This document shows positions 2 to 8,127 of a DNA stretch of 64,000 nt, one piece after another. The position numbers were made by a program, and so were the translations under genes. This DNA is from Obrimoposthia wandeli (taxonomy: Eukaryota). The DNA lies in assembly GCA_977020255.1 (NCBI GenBank), contig CDROCS010000546.1, forward strand, positions 62,001 through 126,000, given 5' to 3'. Under the pieces are notes generated by a model. That model saw only the letters and a program-made list of their open reading frames with translations, was not told the origin of the DNA and did not search any database. Numbering within the stretch: position 1 is the stretch's first letter; every line of letters starts with the position of its first letter.

Positions 2-283
2 GCCAGTGATGATAACCCAGCGGCTATTCCCACTGCAGCAATAGTCGGTATTCCTCTCTATATTAGAGTGACCGCTCTACTGCCACTAGTTGGCTCTTTT
101 CTCGCTAAAGGTGTCAGTATGGGAGCAATTATCGCGCTGATAATTGGCAGTGGCGGCGCCAGTTTACCAGAGGTGATTTTGCTAAAAAGACTGTTTCGCT
201 GGCCGCTGATGGTGGCGTTCCTAAGCGTTATTTTTTCCATGGCAGTGACTGCTGGCTTCACCATAAATTATATAGTCAGCTAG
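2..283 (+). CDS. Permease, DUF318/ArsP-like (3' part; 5' end outside window)
   Basis: Frame is open from base 2: ...NPAAIPTAAIVGIPLYIRVTALLPL...KGVSMGAIIALIIGSGGASLPEVILLKRLF. This resembles the C-terminus of DUF318/ArsP permeases. Confidence 0.8.
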   Translation, partial: ASDDNPAAIPTAAIVGIPLYIRVTALLPLVGSFLAKGVSMGAIIALIIGSGGASLPEVILLKRLFRWPLMVAFLSVIFSMAVTAGFTINYIVS

Positions 284-421
284 TTTTGTGTGGATGAAAA
301 CATTTGTCTAGCGCATCGCTTTTAAAACGATGCCTTTATATTATAAATGGCTAGTATTCACTTTAATGGGTATGGGTCAAATAACGGTCTCAAATAATCC
401 AATTAACACTTCGATTGTCAC

Positions 422-444
422 AATACCCCTCAAACGAGGGTATT
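422..444. promoter_or_regulatory. Palindromic candidate operator AATACCCCTC-AAAC-GAGGGTATT
   Basis: Imperfect inverted repeat about 100 bp upstream of the 547 gene. The 16-bp core recurs at 5476-5491. Confidence 0.5.
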
Positions 445-546
445 AAAAACGGCATCTATCCACTTTAATAGCCCGCTTAAACTATTAGCAATTGAGCAAT
501 CCCGACTACTACCCGCTGCTAATTTCACTAAAGGTCTATTAAATAA

Positions 547-2670
547 ATGCGATACCTCCCTATGCTGGCTCTGTTCGTTGCCGCTATTAGCTTAGCCTTT
601 TTAGGTTATCCACTGATGTCGACATCTTCGGGTGCCTCTAAAGAGCAAGTGGCATCTGACATTACAATTTCTTCCACCGTTAAATCCGCATGGCTACGCG
701 AGCGCTTACCTGACGATGCTCTGTTTTATGCTCGTATCCCCCCGCTCTGGTCTAGTCTTTCTTACTCTCAAGATAGCTTTAAATATGCATTGGGTAATTC
801 ACAGCACACCGAACTGATTGAACAATTGCAAAAGGCGAGTAAAGACTGGCTACAACAGGCAGATCCTGAATTAATTCCACTACTCAATTTGCTTGCGGGG
901 CAACTTGATGGGCCTTTAGAGGTAGCAGTACTGCCAAGTGCTCCAATGCCTCAGATACTCCTCTCTGCTAGTTTGAATTTACAACAGCCTCAACTGCTAA
1001 CAGCTATCATTGATAGCCTTAGCGAAGCTGGCATCGTCAAAAACGAGGTACGTGCCTTAAGTAATGGCCAAGGAGTATTGTTCACTGAGTTGGGAAGTAC
1101 ACCCTATCGCTGGGATAATGAGAGTAAACGTCTTGATATTTTATTACGTTTAGGAGGTGCTGATTTAGAAGCACTAGACACCGTATTCAACAATTTAACC
1201 TTAAATCCTGGTAGTCCAATGCTCGACAATGAACAGCAAATGGATGCTAGTACTAAAGGGTTATACTTTTGGTTTAACAACCAGCTCGCTTACGCTTTTT
1301 ACCAACCATTACTCGCCGCTGGTAATAGCTGGCTGAACGATTTTGCTATTGCAGAAATACGTACCTTGGCGCTTAGTTGGGGAGTTCGAAATAAGAAAGG
1401 TCGATTAAAAATTCAAGTTGATGCGCCGCACAGTAATTCACTGCGCCAGATATTGCCTGTTGCGGGTAACCATCTCGATTTAGCGACTGCTGGCACCCCT
1501 GTTTTTAGCCTGCTACTTAATATCCCTACATTGAAACAATTACAGCAAAGCAATGATCAGTTACAACGTTTAGGGTTGGAAAACGATATCCTCACTGCTT
1601 TACGAAGTCAGCTCTTTGCAACCGCGAATATAGAGTTACCGGCATTATTAGCGGCCATTGGTCCTGAGGCACTACTGATATCCGACGACGCAGGAGAATA
1701 CTTAGCCGTTAAAATTCGTGATCGAAATGTACTACGCACACTAGAAGCTTCGTTAGATGATACAAACAAAATCGCGGCGAAAACCTCTGGCATTAATCAT
1801 CTCAAGCTTGCTAACCCTTTAACTATGAATAGTAAAAAAGGTATAGGTCTGCCTTTTTACCTCGACGGCTTGCTACGTAATGTAGGGAGTCATTTTTATT
1901 GGCAGGTAGATAAAGATTATTTAATTATCGCCAGCCTAGCGCAAATTCTCAAAGATCGGCAGCAGCTATTGTCACAGCAAAATATTTCACAGTGGTTTAT
2001 TCAAGATCAGCGACAAGATCTTAGTAATAGTATCGCTGCATTATCACTCAGCATAGATCAAGCGCCTAAACGGATTTACTACGGCTATATTTCTGCCTTG
2101 CAACTTTTGGCAGATATCACAAAAGCAGAGATCGACACGACTACACTACCATCAGCAAGTGACCTTGCATTACCACAACGTGGTACTTTTGGTCTGCAAT
2201 TAGACTCTAGCGACAGTTTTTCAGCCCTAGAGCTAACTTTCGAAGCTACGCCAATGGATGTGTTACTCGTTGCCAAAGGATTGAGCAGTATCGCTGCAAT
2301 AGCAGGTGTCACCACACTTTTAGCCCCTACGTATCAAACATTTGAGTTTCGCGATATTACCAATCGTGCGTCCGATGCAGCAACCAATGCCAAACTAAGA
2401 TTACTGGGCTTTTATATTGAGCATCAGCGTTTTCCCAACGACACAGAAATCAGCGCTGTCAGTGCAGGTTTTAAAAATACAGCGGATTATCGTTTCACTC
2501 TTGCAGCTGATAGCGGCTTAATTAGTGTCACCTTTAAAGGTCCTTATCAAATATCTGGTGACCGTCTTGAGTTTCTCCCCAGTGTTAGCAACGGTGAGAT
2601 CAACTGGCAATGCAGTTCAAGTCTGCGACGTAAGTATCGCCCGTCTGGCTGTGATACATACACCCGATGA
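547..2670 (+). CDS. Large exported protein with C-terminal type IV pilin-like domain
   Basis: N-terminal hydrophobic signal/anchor. From about 2284, AIAGVTTLLAPTYQTF...FYIEHQRFP resembles pilin alpha1 (ILAAIAIPAYQDY...YYxxxGxFP). Ends in the pilin D-region WQC-x12-C (CSSSLRRKYRPSGC). Confidence 0.75.
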   Translation: MRYLPMLALFVAAISLAFLGYPLMSTSSGASKEQVASDITISSTVKSAWLRERLPDDALFYARIPPLWSSLSYSQDSFKYALGNSQHTELIEQLQKASKDWLQQADPELIPLLNLLAGQLDGPLEVAVLPSAPMPQILLSASLNLQQPQLLTAIIDSLSEAGIVKNEVRALSNGQGVLFTELGSTPYRWDNESKRLDILLRLGGADLEALDTVFNNLTLNPGSPMLDNEQQMDASTKGLYFWFNNQLAYAFYQPLLAAGNSWLNDFAIAEIRTLALSWGVRNKKGRLKIQVDAPHSNSLRQILPVAGNHLDLATAGTPVFSLLLNIPTLKQLQQSNDQLQRLGLENDILTALRSQLFATANIELPALLAAIGPEALLISDDAGEYLAVKIRDRNVLRTLEASLDDTNKIAAKTSGINHLKLANPLTMNSKKGIGLPFYLDGLLRNVGSHFYWQVDKDYLIIASLAQILKDRQQLLSQQNISQWFIQDQRQDLSNSIAALSLSIDQAPKRIYYGYISALQLLADITKAEIDTTTLPSASDLALPQRGTFGLQLDSSDSFSALELTFEATPMDVLLVAKGLSSIAAIAGVTTLLAPTYQTFEFRDITNRASDAATNAKLRLLGFYIEHQRFPNDTEISAVSAGFKNTADYRFTLAADSGLISVTFKGPYQISGDRLEFLPSVSNGEINWQCSSSLRRKYRPSGCDTYTR

Positions 2671-2755
2671 ACATATACGAGGGTAAACCTAATCATTTTT
2701 AAATTATGTCATGGCGCGGGTATTCTACTTGCTGCTTCAATCTAGAGGAAAAAAC

Positions 2756-3094
2756 ATGTACCAAAAATTGATCATCACAGCCGTGCTTAGCTTATTCTTA
2801 TTCAATAATGCCAACGCAGCTGTGGATAAAAACTGTCCTAAAATTGAGGCCACATCTGCAGCTATCGCTGTTGAAGCTGATAAGGCTTATACCCAACAAA
2901 GCTATACTTACGCTAATGATAAATTAAGTCAGCAAGTCAGTGATGCTGTCGCTATAATTAATTCACCCGCTTTTAGCTCTGCCGTTACAAAATTTAGTGA
3001 TACACCGAACGACCAAGACACCAAAGTGAGATCAGAATTGGCAGACGTCGCCGCGCTACTCTACCAGTGGGAAGGCGAAAACTGCTTCGAATAA
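2756..3094 (+). CDS. Small secreted hypothetical protein
   Basis: GAGG RBS before ATG 2756. Signal peptide ends ANA-A. Two Cys, one near each end of the mature chain. Confidence 0.7.
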   Translation: MYQKLIITAVLSLFLFNNANAAVDKNCPKIEATSAAIAVEADKAYTQQSYTYANDKLSQQVSDAVAIINSPAFSSAVTKFSDTPNDQDTKVRSELADVAALLYQWEGENCFE

Positions 3095-3107
3095 GCATTA
3101 AAAAACG

Positions 3108-4223
3108 TCAATGATAGGCGGAGCTGGCGGCAATTTTTGCCACAAGTTCCGCCTGCCTAGAAGCACCACACTTTTGGAAAATAATTTTCAACAGTGAACG
3201 TACAGTGTGAAGAGAGCGTCCGGTGTCAGTGCTAATTTGTTGTAAGCTCAGACCCTGAAATACCCCTTGTACAGTCTGAGCCTCAACAGGTGTTAAATCA
3301 AATAACCGTCGTAATATGACGATATCCAACTGGCGCTGTAAACTATTGATTGTCAACAAGCTGAAGCGCTGCTGCATACCTTGAGTTAATAGCGAGTCAC
3401 TGTCTTGGACATAGGGAGTGACCTTCAAATGATAACCACCGCCGTCCTCATTTAAATAATGGTTTTCACTACCTTGGATTAGTGCTGACAGCTGATACTG
3501 CGCATTAACTATTTTTTGTAACCACTGAAGACTCGATGATGGTAATTTTATCCGCTCATCTGCGCGCCTACCAATACTACTCTGTCGATGTAATAAATTT
3601 TCGAATGCACTATTCGTTTTAATAATTTTTAATTTTTGATCAACTAACACGGCAGCTTTATTTAAGTACTCTAACTCGATAGTTGTCTGTTGCCCCATAG
3701 CAAAAGCCTGTACTGCAGCGACAGCTGCACGTAAATGGGGCCGCAAGCGCGCCAGATACTCGGAACTACGATCTTCACTGTAACTTTGCTCGCCAGCCAG
3801 GCGTTGCAGTGTCAATTTCACTACCCGCTCTCGGTTATCATTCAATGTTAACCAGATAGAATAATCCGTGCCTATATGCGGCTGTACCCAATCGACATAA
3901 AACTCTGACTCTTTAAATTCTCGTAATGAAATAAGTTGATCTGAAATAAAAATACGATCAAACAGGCGCTTATCCGCTGCCGCTGCATTAGTGAGAACGT
4001 TTATTTTACTATAATGGCGCTGATAAAGGTCCATACCGCTGTCAGGGAAACCTTGAAAAACACCACCGAGCACCTGCATTGTACGATAGTCATCTATTTG
4101 AATTGAGCCACTACAACTATTTGTTTTACGTCGGATCAACTGTAATAGCATTTCCAGATACTGTGGCTGGGCAATCGAACGATAAAGCAAATCTACTTCT
4201 TGTGTAATATCACTTAAGCTCAT
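3108..4223 (-). CDS. LuxR-type HTH transcriptional regulator with N-terminal sensor (GAF/PAS-like) region
   Basis: C-terminal LTPVEAQTVQGVFQGLSLQQISTDTGRSLHTVRSLLKIIFQKCGASRQAELV is a LuxR/NarL HTH. Confidence 0.85.
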   Translation of the reverse strand: MSLSDITQEVDLLYRSIAQPQYLEMLLQLIRRKTNSCSGSIQIDDYRTMQVLGGVFQGFPDSGMDLYQRHYSKINVLTNAAAADKRLFDRIFISDQLISLREFKESEFYVDWVQPHIGTDYSIWLTLNDNRERVVKLTLQRLAGEQSYSEDRSSEYLARLRPHLRAAVAAVQAFAMGQQTTIELEYLNKAAVLVDQKLKIIKTNSAFENLLHRQSSIGRRADERIKLPSSSLQWLQKIVNAQYQLSALIQGSENHYLNEDGGGYHLKVTPYVQDSDSLLTQGMQQRFSLLTINSLQRQLDIVILRRLFDLTPVEAQTVQGVFQGLSLQQISTDTGRSLHTVRSLLKIIFQKCGASRQAELVAKIAASSAYH

Positions 4224-4263
4224 GTAGCAGCGAGAGGTACTAAAAACCCCGCTCTAGTTTTCA

Positions 4264-5397
4264 TTATTGATAAGCCAAACTATTCGCGACTTTCACCACT
4301 AATTCGGTTTGTCGATTAACTGCCGCTTTTTGGAAAATAGCCTTTAAAGCTGAGCGCACGGTATGCTCCGACCGCTGAGTCTGCTCACTAATCTGCTTAA
4401 TACTTAACCCCAGAAATATTTGCGACACTATCGCAGTTTCCCCACGGGTAAAGCCATAGAGCAGCTGTAATAGATCAAGATCTAGTTTCTTCTCGCGGGA
4501 TTTAATGGTCAACAACACCATTTGACGACGATCTTCGCGCAATAGCAGAGAATTATGTTGTGAACGATAAGGCAACACTTTGACATCGAAACTGTCGCCC
4601 TTATCACTGGTATAAATTAATTCGCTGCGTGTAATACTAGCTGCTTGGTACACGTCAATATTAGCATCGATACAACGCTCAATGTTATCCTGCAATGGCC
4701 ACTGAAATTCTAGAACATCCCCTATTTTTGTCCATAACCAAGAGCACTCTTGTAACAGTGATTGCGCATGCGAGTTACATTCAAGCATTGTGAAAGAGCG
4801 ATCTAGCAGCATTGCCGGATGATCGATATAATGCACTGAGCTTCCTTTATTCGAATGATTGCGTTGTACCTTCATTGCACGCATCGCGGATATCAAGAAT
4901 GGTCTCAGTTGCGCCAAGTATTGCTGCGCGCTACTTTGGTGATAGTTGCCTGCAGTTTGGTCGCGCTGTAATGTTAAAATCAGTGATTGCTGTTTATTGT
5001 AATCGAGTAAACAAGTTCCCAATGTATCGACAAAGCCTGCTTGAGGCTTAACCCACTCATTGTAAAAAGTGGAAGCCTCGAACAATTTCGGGTCCATCAG
5101 CTGCTCTAATGAAGGCGTTCCGGTATAGAATAAGGGTGACTTTACCGCCATTTTTTTAGCGATATCCAACGGTGCATAATGTTTGATATAGCTGGTAATA
5201 GCGCTATCGCTAAAACCTTGAAATATGCCATCGACCACAGCGTAACTAGCCAAATCATCTATTTGAATAGAGCCGCTCATGCTATTTGTCTTACGACGAA
5301 TGTTACTTAGTAACTGATCTAGATATTTGGGGTCAGAAACGGCTTGATACAGTAAATCTACTTCTTCAAAAATATCTATGCTTGCTGTCATTAGCAC
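4264..5397 (-). CDS. LuxR-type HTH transcriptional regulator, paralog of 3108-4223
   Basis: C-terminal FTRGETAIVSQIFLGLSIKQISEQTQRSEHTVRSALKAIFQKAAVNRQTELV. Shares SGSIQIDD, FQGFxDS and LTLQR motifs with its neighbour. Confidence 0.85.
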   Translation of the reverse strand: MLMTASIDIFEEVDLLYQAVSDPKYLDQLLSNIRRKTNSMSGSIQIDDLASYAVVDGIFQGFSDSAITSYIKHYAPLDIAKKMAVKSPLFYTGTPSLEQLMDPKLFEASTFYNEWVKPQAGFVDTLGTCLLDYNKQQSLILTLQRDQTAGNYHQSSAQQYLAQLRPFLISAMRAMKVQRNHSNKGSSVHYIDHPAMLLDRSFTMLECNSHAQSLLQECSWLWTKIGDVLEFQWPLQDNIERCIDANIDVYQAASITRSELIYTSDKGDSFDVKVLPYRSQHNSLLLREDRRQMVLLTIKSREKKLDLDLLQLLYGFTRGETAIVSQIFLGLSIKQISEQTQRSEHTVRSALKAIFQKAAVNRQTELVVKVANSLAYQ

Positions 5398-5475
5398 CTA
5401 CATCTGAATAATTATCAGCACTCCATCGCTATTGCTCTATTATATTCAGACTACGCTAGTTTTAGTTTTAATTCC

Positions 5476-5491
5476 CCCCTTAAATGAGGGG
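5476..5491. promoter_or_regulatory. Palindromic candidate operator CCCCTT-AAAT-GAGGGG
   Basis: Lies in the divergent region between the LuxR gene (5397) and the secreted gene (5697). Same core as 426-441. Confidence 0.5.
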
Positions 5492-5696
5492 TTCGCTACG
5501 GCGGAAAACACGAGATAATTCTCTTGCCATGAAGGCAACTCTAGAGTGTCGCTATCGCAATATGCGCTTATCTACACCTCTATCTTTTTAAACGAAGGTC
5601 TTTGCCAGGGATGGTTTTTTTCTTTTACATTGCGCTGCTTAATTGGCTATACAAATTACCCATATTTCGAAACAGCCCGACTTCTAAAGGTTTTAA

Positions 5697-6005
5697 ATGT
5701 CTAAACTAACTTTCAAGCAACTGATAGCCACTGTTATCACATTGTTTTCAATGTTGTATGTCCAAAGCGCTCTCGCCGGATCCGTACGTATTTACAATAA
5801 CGATTCCACGTTACATATTATCGAATTAAGTTGTGCTGGCAGCAGTAAAACCCTCGCCATTAAAAGCTCAAGCACATCGACTTATACCTTTCATTCAAGT
5901 CAGAACAATTGCAAAATTGTCGGCGGCAGCGTCAGTTTTCCTAGTGGGCAGCTCAGTGACGGGCAAGCATGGAAGATCGCTAATGGTAAAGCCTCAAAAA
6001 ATTAA
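5697..6005 (+). CDS. Small secreted beta-rich hypothetical protein
   Basis: Signal peptide ends ALA-G. Two Cys. Followed directly by a terminator. Confidence 0.75.
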   Translation: MSKLTFKQLIATVITLFSMLYVQSALAGSVRIYNNDSTLHIIELSCAGSSKTLAIKSSSTSTYTFHSSQNNCKIVGGSVSFPSGQLSDGQAWKIANGKASKN

Positions 6006-6023
6006 TGATCTTTTATAGACTTT

Positions 6024-6048
6024 AAAACCGCCGAATGGCGGTTTTTTT
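6024..6048 (+). terminator. Intrinsic terminator
   Basis: AAAACCGCC-GAAT-GGCGGTTTTTTT just after the 6005 stop. Confidence 0.85.
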
Positions 6049-6333
6049 ATGTTTCAAAATTAACGGCATAAAGCGGCATGATAATACCGTTGACCTGTAA
6101 TGATAAAAGACAAACAAATAAGGAATACATAGCGGATAAATAAACCCCATCTAGATACCCAATATTTCACTCTGCAAGTCCGATTTACACGCCATCACCC
6201 TCGATTCTTAGCGCCAAACTTCTTTAAGCATATGCCAGTATTAAATCAATTCGCCAGAGTGCATACATTTCACTGTAATATGAACCTATACTGTCTATAA
6301 TTAGTAAAACATAGAGTTATAGGACGTTCTAAT

Positions 6334-8127
6334 ATGCTAAAAAATGTTAAAATCACCCGTAAATTCCCTTTGGTGATGATTTCATTGGCACTCTTGTCAG
6401 CACTTGTAACAGGAATGATTGCTTATACCAGTACCGCTAAACACATCAAAAGTTCTGCCAATCAGCAATTGGTATCACTATTGGAATCCAGACGCGCCAG
6501 CTTGAACCAGTATTCAGATAGCATTAAACGCGATTTAGAATTCTTTTCCTCCAGCCCATTACTACGTGAAGCAATAGTTTCATTTTCAAACGCATGGCAT
6601 TCACTCCCCGAAGATAAAACAGGCTATTTAAAGCAACAGTATATTTATAAAAATCCGTACCGAGTGGGTCAAAAAGATGCATTTGCTGCGGCAGATGATC
6701 AAAGTCAATACAGTAAAGTTCACCGTAAATTTCACCCTACATTACGCAATTTATTGCAAGGCGAAGGCTATTATGACTTTTTTTTAATAGACCCTCTTGG
6801 CAATATAATTTACAGCGTAAATAAAGAGCAGGATTTCGCCACTAACTTATTCCACGGCGAATGGAAATCAACGGCAATAGCTAGAATATTTAACTTGATT
6901 AATGAACAACCTGCTGTCGGTGAAATCAGTTTTGCCGATTTTTCTTCTTACGCACCTAGCGCGGGAGAACCTGCAAGTTTTGTCGCCACCCCTATTTTTA
7001 GTGCGGAGACTAAATACTTAGGTACCGCGATGTTCCAACTGCCGATAGAAACGATTAACAAAATAATGCAAGTCACTGCAGGCATGGGCAACAGCGGGGA
7101 AACATATTTAGTGGGTCCCGATAAGCTAATGCGCTCCGATTCTCGATTTTTAAGAGATCGTAGTATATTAAATACGTTGGTAGATACCCCCTCTTCGAAA
7201 GCCGCCTTGGCGGGTGAAACCTCCAGTCGGATTATTAAGGACTATCGCGATATTGCAGTATTCTCCGCCTATAGCTCAGTTGAATTCCTCGGCGCTACTT
7301 GGGCTATTATTGCCGAGATAGATGAGACAGAGATCATGGCGCCTATTGAGTCTATTCGTAGCTTCCTCTGGATTAGCGGCTTGATGATTGCGCTGGTCAT
7401 TTCGATCGTCGGCTACATATTAGCCACTGATATTTCTGAGCCTATCATAAAGATGACAGGGATGATGAACCAGCTCTCAAATAATAACCTCGAAGTCGAT
7501 ATCAGTGTTGAAGAGCGCCGAGATGAGGTGGGCCATATGGCAAATGCGATGCAAGTCTTTAAACGCAACGCGCAAGAGCGTGAGCAACTCCAGCAAGCAT
7601 TAGCACATATAGCAGATCACGACACATTAACGGGTTCATACACTCGAAAGTACGCGATGGACAAACTCCCCCTCCTGTTAGAAAGCGCAAAACAGCAGTA
7701 TTCAAAAGTGGTCATGATGTTTATTGACCTTGACGATTTCAAGTTGATCAACGATATTCATGGGCATCAAACGGGAGATATCGTTCTCAGTCAAGTCGCC
7801 ATAAAATTACAGGAAAATGTTCGCAAAGAGGACATTGTGGCACGTATTGGTGGTGACGAATTTATTATTATCCTACCCAAGATTGAAAGCATTGATGAGG
7901 GCTTAGAGATTGCAGACAATATACTAGCAGCTGTTCGCCCGCAGCTTCCTGTGATTGGAGATAGTTCGCGTATTACACTGAGTATTGGGTTATCTATTTA
8001 TCCAAACGATGCCAATAATGCCAGCGACTTGCTGTCCCACGCTGATATGGCGATGTACAGTGCCAAAGGACAAGGAAAGAATACTGTTAATGCATGGAAC
8101 CCTTCTATGCAAAGAGTGACCAGTTAA
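6334..8127 (+). CDS. Membrane diguanylate cyclase (Cache-like periplasmic sensor, HAMP, GGDEF)
   Basis: Two TM segments. YDFFLID and FADFSSYAPS Cache-type motifs. HAMP region. RKED I-site followed by RIGGDEF. Confidence 0.9.
   Translation: MLKNVKITRKFPLVMISLALLSALVTGMIAYTSTAKHIKSSANQQLVSLLESRRASLNQYSDSIKRDLEFFSSSPLLREAIVSFSNAWHSLPEDKTGYLKQQYIYKNPYRVGQKDAFAAADDQSQYSKVHRKFHPTLRNLLQGEGYYDFFLIDPLGNIIYSVNKEQDFATNLFHGEWKSTAIARIFNLINEQPAVGEISFADFSSYAPSAGEPASFVATPIFSAETKYLGTAMFQLPIETINKIMQVTAGMGNSGETYLVGPDKLMRSDSRFLRDRSILNTLVDTPSSKAALAGETSSRIIKDYRDIAVFSAYSSVEFLGATWAIIAEIDETEIMAPIESIRSFLWISGLMIALVISIVGYILATDISEPIIKMTGMMNQLSNNNLEVDISVEERRDEVGHMANAMQVFKRNAQEREQLQQALAHIADHDTLTGSYTRKYAMDKLPLLLESAKQQYSKVVMMFIDLDDFKLINDIHGHQTGDIVLSQVAIKLQENVRKEDIVARIGGDEFIIILPKIESIDEGLEIADNILAAVRPQLPVIGDSSRITLSIGLSIYPNDANNASDLLSHADMAMYSAKGQGKNTVNAWNPSMQRVTS

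What the first reader, a model, noticed from the sequence alone, without database searches (positions are those of the whole stretch)
422..6005. Candidate new regulon: tandem LuxR pair, shared operator, pilin-fusion and two secreted proteins
Seen: a 16-bp near-palindrome CCCCTY-AAAY-GAGGGK occurs at 426-441 (before the pilin-fusion gene) and at 5476-5491 (between LuxR-2 and the 102-aa secreted gene). The 9-mer ACGAGGGTA from the first site recurs at 2677-2685, before the 112-aa secreted gene. So all three exported-protein genes flanking the two LuxR genes carry a full or half site. Established: LuxR/NarL HTH dimers bind inverted repeats. Inference: this is a self-contained sensor-to-surface/secreted-output module. 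I recognise no named system with this content.
Basis: partly seen in the sequence, partly recalled or inferred. Interest (0 to 1): 0.72.

Follow-up and report, generated by a model that had tools for sequence, protein, structure and literature searches.

The report
Shared operator of a tandem LuxR pair
A conserved 16-letter mirror-image DNA site sits at a fixed distance in front of the promoters of two neighbouring LuxR-type sensor-regulator genes and of nearby exported-protein genes, so it is very probably the pair's own switch for a small cell-surface gene set; the mechanism is ordinary, but this site and this regulator family have not been described.

Summary
The sites at 426-441 and 5476-5491 are copies of a 7-2-7 palindrome, CCCCTCA-WW-TGAGGGG. 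Against the perfect copy from a relative, the window has 2 matches within 2 mismatches where 0.06 are expected.

It is not a REP-like repeat. In three related genomes (3.5-5 Mb) the best match lies at the orthologous LuxR locus. Four relatives without the LuxR pair have no good site.

The site lies upstream of LuxR-2 in all four genomes. Exactly 22 nt from it, a -10-like hexamer follows on nearly every gene-facing side. That centres the operator near -42.5, and the -35 elements are weak. This is the class II activator geometry of the lux box, here serving back-to-back promoters.

Predicted targets here are LuxR-2, the 102-aa gene and the pilin-fusion gene. In relatives the target is an autotransporter instead. 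The half-site before the 112-aa gene is weak evidence.

The regulators are old tandem paralogues. Each has a quorum-sensing-LuxR-like ligand domain, a PAS domain and an HTH. They belong to a large uncharacterised family.

Binding, transcription starts and ligand are untested. The scan noted a similar C-run/G-run LuxR operator on another contig of this assembly (s1-208482).

The parts
426..441 (.). Operator O1, a 7-2-7 palindrome with 2 mismatches to CCCCTCA-NN-TGAGGGG, 105 bp upstream of the pilin-fusion ATG
   Evidence: It is one of only two matches in the window.
464..469 (+). Predicted -10 hexamer TTTAAT of the pilin-fusion promoter, exactly 22 nt after O1
   Evidence: Prediction only; the transcription start is not mapped.
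547..2670 (+). 707-aa exported protein: N-terminal hydrophobic leader, about 570-aa alpha/beta region, then a full-length type IVa pilin-like module (long helix 578-626 plus beta head with C689/C702)
   Evidence: Pfam Pilin E=9.8e-9. AF2 model and Foldseek match to Neisseria PilE 1ay2, TM 0.61. 13 homologues.
2677..2685 (.). Half-site ACGAGGGTA, identical to the promoter-proximal half of O1; a possible degenerate operator before the 112-aa gene
   Evidence: The hexamer at the equivalent 22-nt offset, TGTCAT at 2707-2712 (read), matches TATAAT at 4 of 6. The distal half matches 2 of 7. Weak.
2756..3094 (+). 112-aa predicted secreted protein (leader ends ANA|A, two Cys), convergent with LuxR-1; no family match
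   Evidence: The only orthologue among 190 family genomes is in G005, at the same position.
3108..4223 (-). LuxR-1, 371 aa, the downstream paralogue, probably co-transcribed with LuxR-2 (40-bp gap, no operator)
   Evidence: LuxR-1 clade support 100/97.
4264..5397 (-). LuxR-2, 377 aa (probable true start ATG 5391): QS-LuxR-like ligand domain 1-180, PAS about 185-300, GerE-type HTH 309-377
   Evidence: AF2 pLDDT 83. VIA Z 14.2 to VqsR LBD, Z 10.7 to VqmA, Z 10.9 to the NarL DNA-binding domain. LuxR-2 clade support 97/94.
5448..5453 (-). Predicted -10 hexamer TAGTCT of the LuxR-2 promoter, 22 nt from O2. A stronger TATAAT lies 9 nt further on (5439-5444).
   Evidence: The same offset gives TAAGCT and TAGCCT in G005 and G426.
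5476..5491 (.). Operator O2, 1 mismatch to the palindrome, between LuxR-2 and the 102-aa gene
   Evidence: Conserved upstream of LuxR-2 in G005, G426 and G429. Unchanged in a near-identical strain from another study.
5514..5519 (+). Predicted -10 hexamer GATAAT of the 102-aa gene promoter, 22 nt from O2
   Evidence: G005 has CATAAT at the same offset.
5586..5598 (+). 13-nt block TTTTAAACGAAGG in the 102-aa gene leader, identical in G005 while the surrounding leader has diverged; unexplained
5697..6005 (+). 102-aa predicted secreted, beta-rich protein (leader ends ALA|G); no family match; rare
   Evidence: 5 homologues; only G005 among 190 genomes.
6024..6045 (+). Intrinsic terminator-like hairpin that closes the 102-aa gene unit

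Best explanation
The 16-bp palindrome CCCCTCA-WW-TGAGGGG is the operator of the tandem regulators LuxR-2 and LuxR-1. Each regulator has a quorum-sensing-LuxR-like ligand domain, a PAS domain and a GerE-type HTH. A dimer binds the site, either a homodimer or a LuxR-1/LuxR-2 heterodimer; the two recognition helices are nearly identical.

The operator is centred about 42.5 bp upstream of weak-(-35) promoters and activates them in the class II manner. At O2 one bound dimer serves two back-to-back promoters. One gives positive autoregulation of LuxR-2 and the co-transcribed LuxR-1. The other drives the 102-aa secreted protein gene. At O1 the dimer drives the pilin-fusion gene and perhaps the 112-aa gene downstream of it.

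An unknown small ligand is sensed by the N-terminal domains. The output is a small, lineage-variable set of surface or exported proteins: the pilin fusion here, an autotransporter in relatives.

Shown: the sites, their conservation, their uniqueness in the genomes searched, their co-occurrence with the LuxR pair, their spacing to -10-like hexamers, the protein folds and the old duplication. Inferred: which protein binds, activation rather than repression, the transcription starts, the ligand and the physiological role.
For: - Rarity in the window: 2 matches at up to 2 mismatches against 0.06 expected. No other good weight-matrix hit in 74 kb.
- Conservation: a copy lies upstream of the LuxR-2 orthologue in G005 (perfect palindrome, 88 nt from the ATG), in G426 and in G429. 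The over-long N-terminus of metagenomic LuxR-2 orthologue P0022 reads ..TPHLRGG.., which is the translation of the operator letters, about 85 nt before the true Met.
- Specificity: the only 0-1-mismatch site in G005 (3.5 Mb) and in G426 (5 Mb) is at the LuxR locus. The other 2-mismatch hits examined lie inside open reading frames or are terminator-like hairpins. Four relatives without the pair have no 0-1-mismatch site, and their 2-mismatch counts do not exceed the reversed-pattern control.
- Geometry: among 10 gene-facing flanks, the mean match to TATAAT is 4.0 of 6 at offset 22, against 1.0-2.7 at every other offset from 10 to 39. Seven of 10 have A2 and T6, against at most 3 elsewhere. The best -35 match is only 2-3 of 6 in all nine promoters.
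- Site architecture: 7-2-7 inverted heptamers suit GerE-type HTH dimers. The HTH superposes on the NarL and DosR DNA-binding domains at Z about 10.8.
- Precedent: the lux box is an inverted repeat centred at -42.5 (PMC3376562).
- Tandem pair: it is conserved with one member of each clade per locus.
Against: - No binding, expression or transcription-start data exist. No RNA run holds the locus.
- At the LuxR-2 promoter of the window a better TATAAT lies 9 nt further downstream. That would put the operator at -51.5.
- A site covering -50 to -35 could also repress.
- Only four genomes, forming two close pairs, carry the site, so the promoter instances are not all independent.
- The pilin-fusion gene of G005 has no site.
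- Regulation of the 112-aa gene rests on a half-site.
- Pfam GerE scores of the two window proteins fall just under the gathering cut-off.
Confidence: 0.6

Rival explanations
1. The same proteins bind the same operator, but they act as repressors or as a ligand-relieved or dual switch. Occupying -50 to -35 would block RNA polymerase. This resembles EsaR-type or VqsR-type negative control.
For: The operator abuts or overlaps the -35 region. The closest structural match of the ligand domain, VqsR, is described as directly inhibiting qscR through an inverted repeat TCGCC-N8-GGCGA (PMC3592444). A strong TATAAT lies 31 nt from O2 on the LuxR-2 side.
Against: All nine promoters have poor -35 elements, 2-3 of 6, and mostly imperfect -10 elements. 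That is typical of activator-dependent promoters. The exact -42.5 spacing on both sides of one site is the class II activation geometry (PMC3376562).
Confidence: 0.2
2. The palindrome is the site of a different transcription factor encoded elsewhere, and it merely regulates this locus.
For: No binding data exist. Other GC-run palindromes serve other regulators, for example VqmA with AGGGGGGATTTCCCCCCT.
Against: In each genome the good sites occur only at the LuxR locus. They are absent from relatives that lack the pair. They always precede LuxR-2, and in G426 also LuxR-1. A trans-acting global factor would be expected to have more sites.
Confidence: 0.1
3. The sites are chance palindromes, a REP-like repeat, or RNA hairpins or terminators with no operator role.
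For: The 16-mers can fold as 5-6-bp hairpins of -9 to -12 kcal/mol.
Against: The fold energies are not exceptional (z from -0.9 to -3.0). No T-run follows the sites. They lie between divergent genes, upstream of the predicted promoters. They are not dispersed. They are conserved where the flanks have diverged. The pair next to the loop does not covary: C-G, T-G and A-G are seen.
Confidence: 0.03

Closest known systems
LuxR/TraR/LasR-type quorum-sensing activators with lux-box or tra-box operators
   Same: The N-terminal domain has the fold of their ligand-binding domains (TraR, QscR, CepR2, CviR and LasR at Z 11.8-12.7). The C-terminus is a GerE HTH. The operator is palindromic and centred near -42.5 of weak-(-35) promoters (PMC3376562). 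The regulator controls its own gene. From my own knowledge, TraR also serves divergent promoters from one tra box.
   Different: An extra PAS domain lies between the ligand domain and the HTH, giving 377 aa instead of about 240. There is no Pfam Autoind_bind signature. No LuxI was found, although that search was inconclusive. The operator is a 16-bp 7-2-7 C-run/G-run site rather than an 18-20-bp lux box. The regulators are a conserved tandem pair of paralogues.
VqmA (Vibrio cholerae and phage VP882), the PAS plus LuxR-HTH receptor of DPO
   Same: Residues 184-377 superpose on VqmA (Z 10.7; Foldseek). The operator is a G/C-run palindrome with an A/T centre next to the regulator gene. VqmA binds AGGGGGGATTTCCCCCCT (bioRxiv 10.1101/2021.04.15.439952).
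   Different: There is an additional N-terminal LBD/GAF-like domain. No sequence match was detected. The run polarity is opposite: the C-run is on the 5' side of each strand here, the G-run in the VqmA site. The targets are exported proteins, not an sRNA.
VqsR (Pseudomonas aeruginosa orphan LuxR-type regulator)
   Same: It is the best structural match of the N-terminal domain (5xhx, Z 14.2, rmsd 3.5 A over 164 residues). It is an orphan regulator that binds an inverted repeat (TCGCC-N8-GGCGA, PMC3592444).
   Different: From my own knowledge, VqsR has two domains and about 270 aa. It is described as a repressor of qscR. Its operator sequence and spacing differ.
NarL/NarP 7-2-7 heptamer sites
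   Same: The site architecture is the same: two inverted heptamers separated by 2 bp. This point about NarL is from my own knowledge. The HTH fold is the same (1je8, Z 10.9, rmsd 2.1 A).
   Different: There is no receiver domain and no phosphorylation. The heptamer sequence differs.
Uncharacterised family of roughly 375-aa LuxR-type regulators, to which the pair belongs
   Same: Full-length matches with the same length. 8,995 clusters at 50% identity reach E<=1e-10. GerE is detected in most of the ten members tested and PAS in one.
   Different: The LuxR-1/LuxR-2 subfamily is tiny: 6 clusters above 360 bits, then a gap down to 175 bits. Among 12 distant members checked, a similar palindrome was seen upstream of only one orthologous pair (L040 and L041).

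Membership tests
LuxR/FixJ/NarL (GerE-type HTH) regulators | C-terminal GerE-type helix-turn-helix domain | tested here: met
   Pfam GerE scores 22.5 bits for LuxR-2 and 15.9 bits for LuxR-1, just under the 23.5 cut-off. Orthologues P0014 and P0018 and wider relatives pass it. Modelled residues 309-377 superpose on the NarL, DosR and RcsB DNA-binding domains at Z 10.7-10.9 and rmsd 1.5-2.1 A.
LuxR/FixJ/NarL (GerE-type HTH) regulators | Binds an inverted repeat as a dimer | not testable with these tools
   A conserved 7-2-7 palindrome is present. Binding itself needs EMSA or DAP-seq.
AHL-type quorum-sensing LuxR receptors (LuxR, TraR, LasR) | Autoind_bind domain (PF03472) recognisable by sequence | tested here: not met
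   No Pfam or NCBIfam match to the N-terminal 300 residues at E<=0.1. None in ten relatives at E<=0.01. Only the fold is similar (Z 12-14).
AHL-type quorum-sensing LuxR receptors (LuxR, TraR, LasR) | Two-domain architecture, ligand domain plus HTH, about 240-250 aa | tested here: not met
   371 and 377 aa, with a PAS-like domain at about 185-300 between the two.
AHL-type quorum-sensing LuxR receptors (LuxR, TraR, LasR) | Cognate LuxI-type synthase (PF00765) in the genome | tested here: inconclusive
   No match in G005, G426, G429 or the own assembly. The control genomes did not ring either, so absence is not shown.
AHL-type quorum-sensing LuxR receptors (LuxR, TraR, LasR) | Palindromic box centred near -42.5 of target promoters | tested here: inconclusive
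   The operator-22 nt-(-10-like hexamer) arrangement is seen at 9 of 10 gene-facing flanks, with weak -35 elements. The promoters are predicted; no transcription start is mapped.
VqmA family (PAS plus LuxR HTH, DPO receptor) | Sequence homology to VqmA and a two-domain PAS-HTH architecture | tested here: not met
   A profile search of PDB sequences finds only HTH-level matches and not VqmA. The architecture has an extra N-terminal domain. Residues 184-377 are similar in fold only (Z 10.7).
VqmA family (PAS plus LuxR HTH, DPO receptor) | G6-ATTT-C6 type binding site | tested here: not met
   The site here is C4-TCA-WW-TGA-G4, the opposite polarity.
NarL-type response regulators | N-terminal receiver (REC) domain | tested here: not met
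   No REC match. The N-terminus has a GAF/LBD-like fold.
Type IV pilins (for the 707-aa target gene) | Class III leader with a G|F(T/S)LIE prepilin peptidase site at the N-terminus | tested here: not met
   The pilin-like module starts at about residue 578 behind a 570-aa region. The family consensus keeps ..AIPAYQDY.. but has no leader or cleavage motif. The Pfam Pilin match and the fold match are met.

The most novel reading that the evidence does not exclude
LuxR-1 and LuxR-2 act as an obligate heterodimer of two three-domain sensors, forming a two-ligand AND gate. The heterodimer sits on one palindrome placed exactly midway between two back-to-back promoters whose -10 elements are 60 bp apart. 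It fires both at once, locking itself on and deploying a swappable adhesin cassette (pilin fusion, autotransporter, small secreted proteins) in host-associated marine Oceanospirillales-like bacteria. The same C-run/G-run logic may extend to part of the roughly 9,000-cluster uncharacterised family.
Probability: 0.2. Interest if true: 0.65.

Novelty: new variant of a known kind. Interest (0 to 1): 0.5.

Why it matters
It gives a concrete, testable operator, promoter geometry and target set for one branch of a very large family. That family has about 9,000 clusters at 50% identity and consists of three-domain LuxR-type regulators. I found no curated family model beyond the HTH, no sequence match to a solved structure outside the HTH, and no paper describing it in the searches I ran.

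It also offers a compact example of one palindromic site serving two divergent class II promoters. In addition it links an unusual pilin-fusion protein and two orphan secreted proteins to a sensory input. If the ligand is a host or community signal, this would be a new LuxR-solo-like signalling route in marine host-associated bacteria.

The principle itself, a transcription factor with a palindromic operator and autoregulation, is standard.

Tried and rejected
G000 is 1.35 Gb in 6,912 contigs and mixes AT-rich, low-coding (eukaryote-like) contigs with bacterial ones. Hits equalled the reversed-pattern control, 32 against 30. Loci L003-L020 were used only for GC content and open-frame coverage and were not pursued. 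I took none of them for human.
- The single-protein scan of genome contigs with the pilin fusion found nothing. The scan with an alignment gave 8 loci, none with the LuxR pair beside the gene. The five-gene synteny is therefore not general.
- The metagenome-contig scan with LuxR-2 orthologues returned only distant relatives. The JGI and ENA contigs that hold orthologous pairs could not be read.
- A sample of 401 genomes from G005's order gave only G005.
- Rfam found no RNA family in 250-6350.
- No RNA run holds the locus. Read laying showed only contigs.
- The ESM Atlas gave no trustworthy family for the two small proteins.
- A crude search for C-run/G-run palindromes upstream of 12 distant family members found one orthologous pair only. 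The operator type is therefore not shown to be family-wide.
- The hairpin or terminator reading was rejected.
Full report
**Setting**

The window is G000:C546:62001-126000, part of a 173-kb contig. The contig is gene-dense and bacterial. The assembly is 1.35 Gb in 6,912 contigs and also holds AT-rich, low-coding contigs. Whole-assembly counts therefore say nothing about one bacterium.

The nearest relatives are Oceanospirillaceae/Nitrincolaceae-like MAGs and an Osedax symbiont. The neighbouring aldehyde dehydrogenase is 91% identical to that of MAG G005. DNA at least 99% identical occurs in contigs from another study and from a marine metagenome.

**Observation**

The two full sites are copies of a 7-2-7 palindrome, CCCCTCA-WW-TGAGGGG. 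A perfect copy occurs in G005 at L036 7728-7743.

With that independent consensus and up to 2 mismatches, the window holds just these two sites. The expectation is 0.06, and 0 of 100 shuffles reach 2. At 3 mismatches no further site appears. A weight matrix scores them 24.0 and 22.2, against 9.0 for the next hit, which is coding. That matrix was trained partly on the window's own sites.

The 9-mer at 2677-2685 is a real repeat of the proximal half of O1, but it is weak statistically.

**Not a dispersed repeat, and tied to the LuxR pair**

- In G005 (3.5 Mb) the only exact site is at the LuxR locus.
- In G426 (5 Mb) the only 1-mismatch site is at the LuxR locus.
- In G429 one of seven 2-mismatch sites is there.
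- The other 2-mismatch hits examined lie inside open reading frames or are terminator-like hairpins with different arms.
- Four relatives carry the pilin-fusion gene and gave no match above E 7e-5 to LuxR-2. They have no 0-1-mismatch site, and their 2-mismatch counts do not exceed the reversed-pattern control.

**Orthologous loci**

Among 190 genomes of G005's family, close LuxR-2 relatives occur only in G005, G426 and G429, always as a tandem pair. In G429 both copies are interrupted by frameshifts.

G005 contig C80 mirrors the window: aldehyde dehydrogenase, 102-aa orthologue (65%), LuxR-2 (59%), LuxR-1 (57%), 112-aa orthologue (44%). The two small genes have no other orthologue in the 190 genomes.

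In G426 and G429 the gene divergent from LuxR-2 is an 801-aa autotransporter. In G005 an autotransporter-like gene starts just beyond the 112-aa orthologue.

The pilin-fusion gene is on another contig in G005 and has no site upstream. In contrast, two JGI metagenome contigs (6,684 and 7,649 bp) each appear to hold a pilin-fusion, a LuxR-1 and a LuxR-2 orthologue. This rests on three coincident contig lengths each.

**Where the sites lie**

A copy lies upstream of LuxR-2 in all four genomes, with the flanking GAA conserved:

| Genome | Position | Distance to LuxR-2 start |
|---|---|---|
| window | 5476-5491 | 84 nt from ATG 5391 |
| G005 | L036 7728-7743 | 88 nt |
| G426 | L050 10252-10267 | about 205 nt |
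| G429 | L051 8584-8599 | about 205 nt |

Extra copies are:

- window 426-441, before the pilin fusion;
- L036 10710-10725, 66 nt before the autotransporter-like ATG;
- L050 8867-8882, between LuxR-2 and LuxR-1.

The over-long annotated N-terminus of P0022, the LuxR-2 orthologue on the 7,649-bp contig, reads ..KTPHLRGGFD.. That is what the operator letters translate to, about 85 nt before the true Met. This is consistent with a fifth conserved copy.

**Promoter geometry**

Exactly 22 nt beyond the 16-mer, on the gene-facing sides, the following hexamers occur:

| Site and direction | Gene faced | Hexamer |
|---|---|---|
| window O1, + | pilin fusion | TTTAAT |
| window O2, - | LuxR-2 | TAGTCT |
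| window O2, + | 102-aa gene | GATAAT |
| G005 | LuxR-2 | TAAGCT |
| G005 | 102-aa orthologue | CATAAT |
| G005 | autotransporter-like gene | TATGAT |
| G426 | LuxR-2 | TAGCCT |
| G426 | autotransporter | CATCAT |
| G426 | LuxR-1 | TATAAA |

Across offsets 10-39, the mean match to TATAAT is 4.0 of 6 at offset 22 and 1.0-2.7 everywhere else. Seven of ten hexamers have A2 and T6 at offset 22, against at most three elsewhere. The non-coding side of O1 (ATTGGA) and the 112-aa side of the second G005 site (TTTCTA) lack such a hexamer. Best -35 matches are only 2-3 of 6.

If the hexamer is the -10 element, the operator covers -50 to -35 and is centred at -42.5. That is the position of the lux box (PMC3376562). 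O2 and its orthologues would then sit midway between two back-to-back promoters.

Caveats:

- The orthologous pairs are not independent.
- No transcription start is mapped.
- A stronger TATAAT lies 9 nt further downstream on the LuxR-2 side of the window.

**The regulators**

Pfam sees only a sub-threshold GerE match. NCBIfam sees only HTH-level matches. The AF2 model of LuxR-2 (pLDDT 83) has three parts:

- Residues 1-180 match quorum-sensing LuxR ligand-binding domains and GAF domains: VqsR LBD at Z 14.2, and TraR, QscR, CepR2, CviR and LasR at Z 11.8-12.7.
- Residues 184-377 match VqmA (PAS plus HTH, Z 10.7).
- The HTH matches NarL and DosR (Z about 10.8).

No solved relative is found by sequence beyond the HTH.

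A profile search finds 8,995 clusters at E<=1e-10 with the same length and full-length alignment. Only 6 clusters are close. Most of the ten relatives tested score GerE above threshold, and one scores PAS.

A tree separates a LuxR-1 clade (100/97) from a LuxR-2 clade (97/94), with one member of each per locus. The duplication is therefore old and both copies are kept in the same order. The recognition helix, R-S/T-x-H-T-[VIL]-R-S..K, is nearly identical in both clades. Both should read the same heptamer, and a heterodimer is plausible.

**Targets**

The pilin fusion has a full-length type IVa pilin-like module at its C-terminus: helix 578-626 and a beta head, TM 0.61 to Neisseria PilE. It sits behind an alpha/beta region of about 570 aa that faintly resembles Treponema pallidum TP0453. 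It has no prepilin leader.

The 102-aa and 112-aa proteins are rare orphans whose N-termini read as signal peptides, judged by eye.

For the 112-aa gene the evidence is limited to three points:

- the half-site with TGTCAT at the equivalent offset in the window (read);
- a 4-mismatch site with TTAAAT at offset 22 in G005;
- its conserved position, convergent with LuxR-1.

In the window it may simply be read through from the pilin-fusion promoter, because no terminator-like site separates the two genes.

**Conclusion**

By the usual comparative logic, the palindrome is the operator of the LuxR pair. The logic rests on a site unique to the regulator's locus, conserved upstream of the regulator gene, co-occurring with it, and matching the symmetry of its DNA-binding domain.

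It most likely activates LuxR-2/LuxR-1 itself and a small, lineage-variable set of exported or surface proteins. Repression, binding by another factor, and a structural or chance origin rank lower, in that order.

An earlier scan note (s1-208482) reports a LuxR-type regulator with a 7-2-7 C-run/G-run operator on another contig of this assembly. I did not test it. A similar palindrome, followed by TATAGT after 21 nt, precedes one distant family member (L040 and L041), but it is not general among the twelve I checked.

**Limits**

- No RNA data exist for the locus.

Noticed in passing
window 5586-5598; L036 about 7640-7652 (minus strand): A 13-nt block, TTTTAAACGAAGG, in the leader of the 102-aa gene is identical in G005 while the rest of the leader has diverged and differs in length (about 170 against 400 nt). 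It resembles an operator half (AAACGAGGG). In the window it abuts a promoter-like TTGCCA-18-TACATT at 5602-5631.
   Followed up: partly
window 6334-8127: A dCache-HAMP-GGDEF diguanylate cyclase gene lies between the 102-aa gene and the aldehyde dehydrogenase here. It is absent from the same junction in G005. In G426 and G429 a methyl-accepting chemotaxis protein gene flanks LuxR-1 instead.
   Followed up: partly
L051 (G429:C1:4038000-4057000): Both LuxR genes, the autotransporter, the chemotaxis receptor and a cystathionine-synthase-like gene are all split by frameshifts relative to G426. This is either pseudogene decay in a 5-Mb single-contig genome or homopolymer errors from long-read assembly.
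   Followed up: no
L040 1237-1253 and L041 1238-1253: A distant family member (24% identity to LuxR-2) has CCCCCTCAATTGGGGG about 230 nt upstream of its start in two genomes, followed after 21 nt by TATAGT or TACGGT. Some other branches of the family may use similar C-run/G-run operators.
   Followed up: partly
L007, L009, L012, L015, L016 (G000 contigs C1252, C1396, C1709, C2407, C2412): An identical 27-nt stretch containing CCCCTCATTTATGGGG recurs on five contigs of about 38% GC. It lies inside open frames of 107 to 712 codons, three of them over 550. It looks like a multi-copy mobile element of another organism in the assembly and is unrelated to the operator.
   Followed up: no
window 547-2670 (model m2bee96162254): In the 707-aa protein the pilin-like alpha-1 helix is internal (578-626), with no prepilin peptidase site. 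The N-terminal 570 aa faintly resemble T. pallidum TP0453 (Foldseek E about 7e-4). The topology is unclear, given an N-terminal leader plus an internal hydrophobic helix with a disulfide-bearing head.
   Followed up: partly
window 300-6100 against runs X2 and X3: Contigs at least 99% identical to parts of this stretch occur under a different organism label in another study (5143-5689, operator unchanged) and in a marine metagenome (pilin-fusion gene fragments). The bacterium is therefore not peculiar to the assembled host. Position 5505, in the operator-to-(-10) spacer, is polymorphic.
   Followed up: partly
G000:C4085:506030-507094 (L031, L057): A third full-length family member (about 24% identity) lies on another bacterial contig of the assembly. 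No similar palindrome was found within 450 bp upstream.
   Followed up: partly
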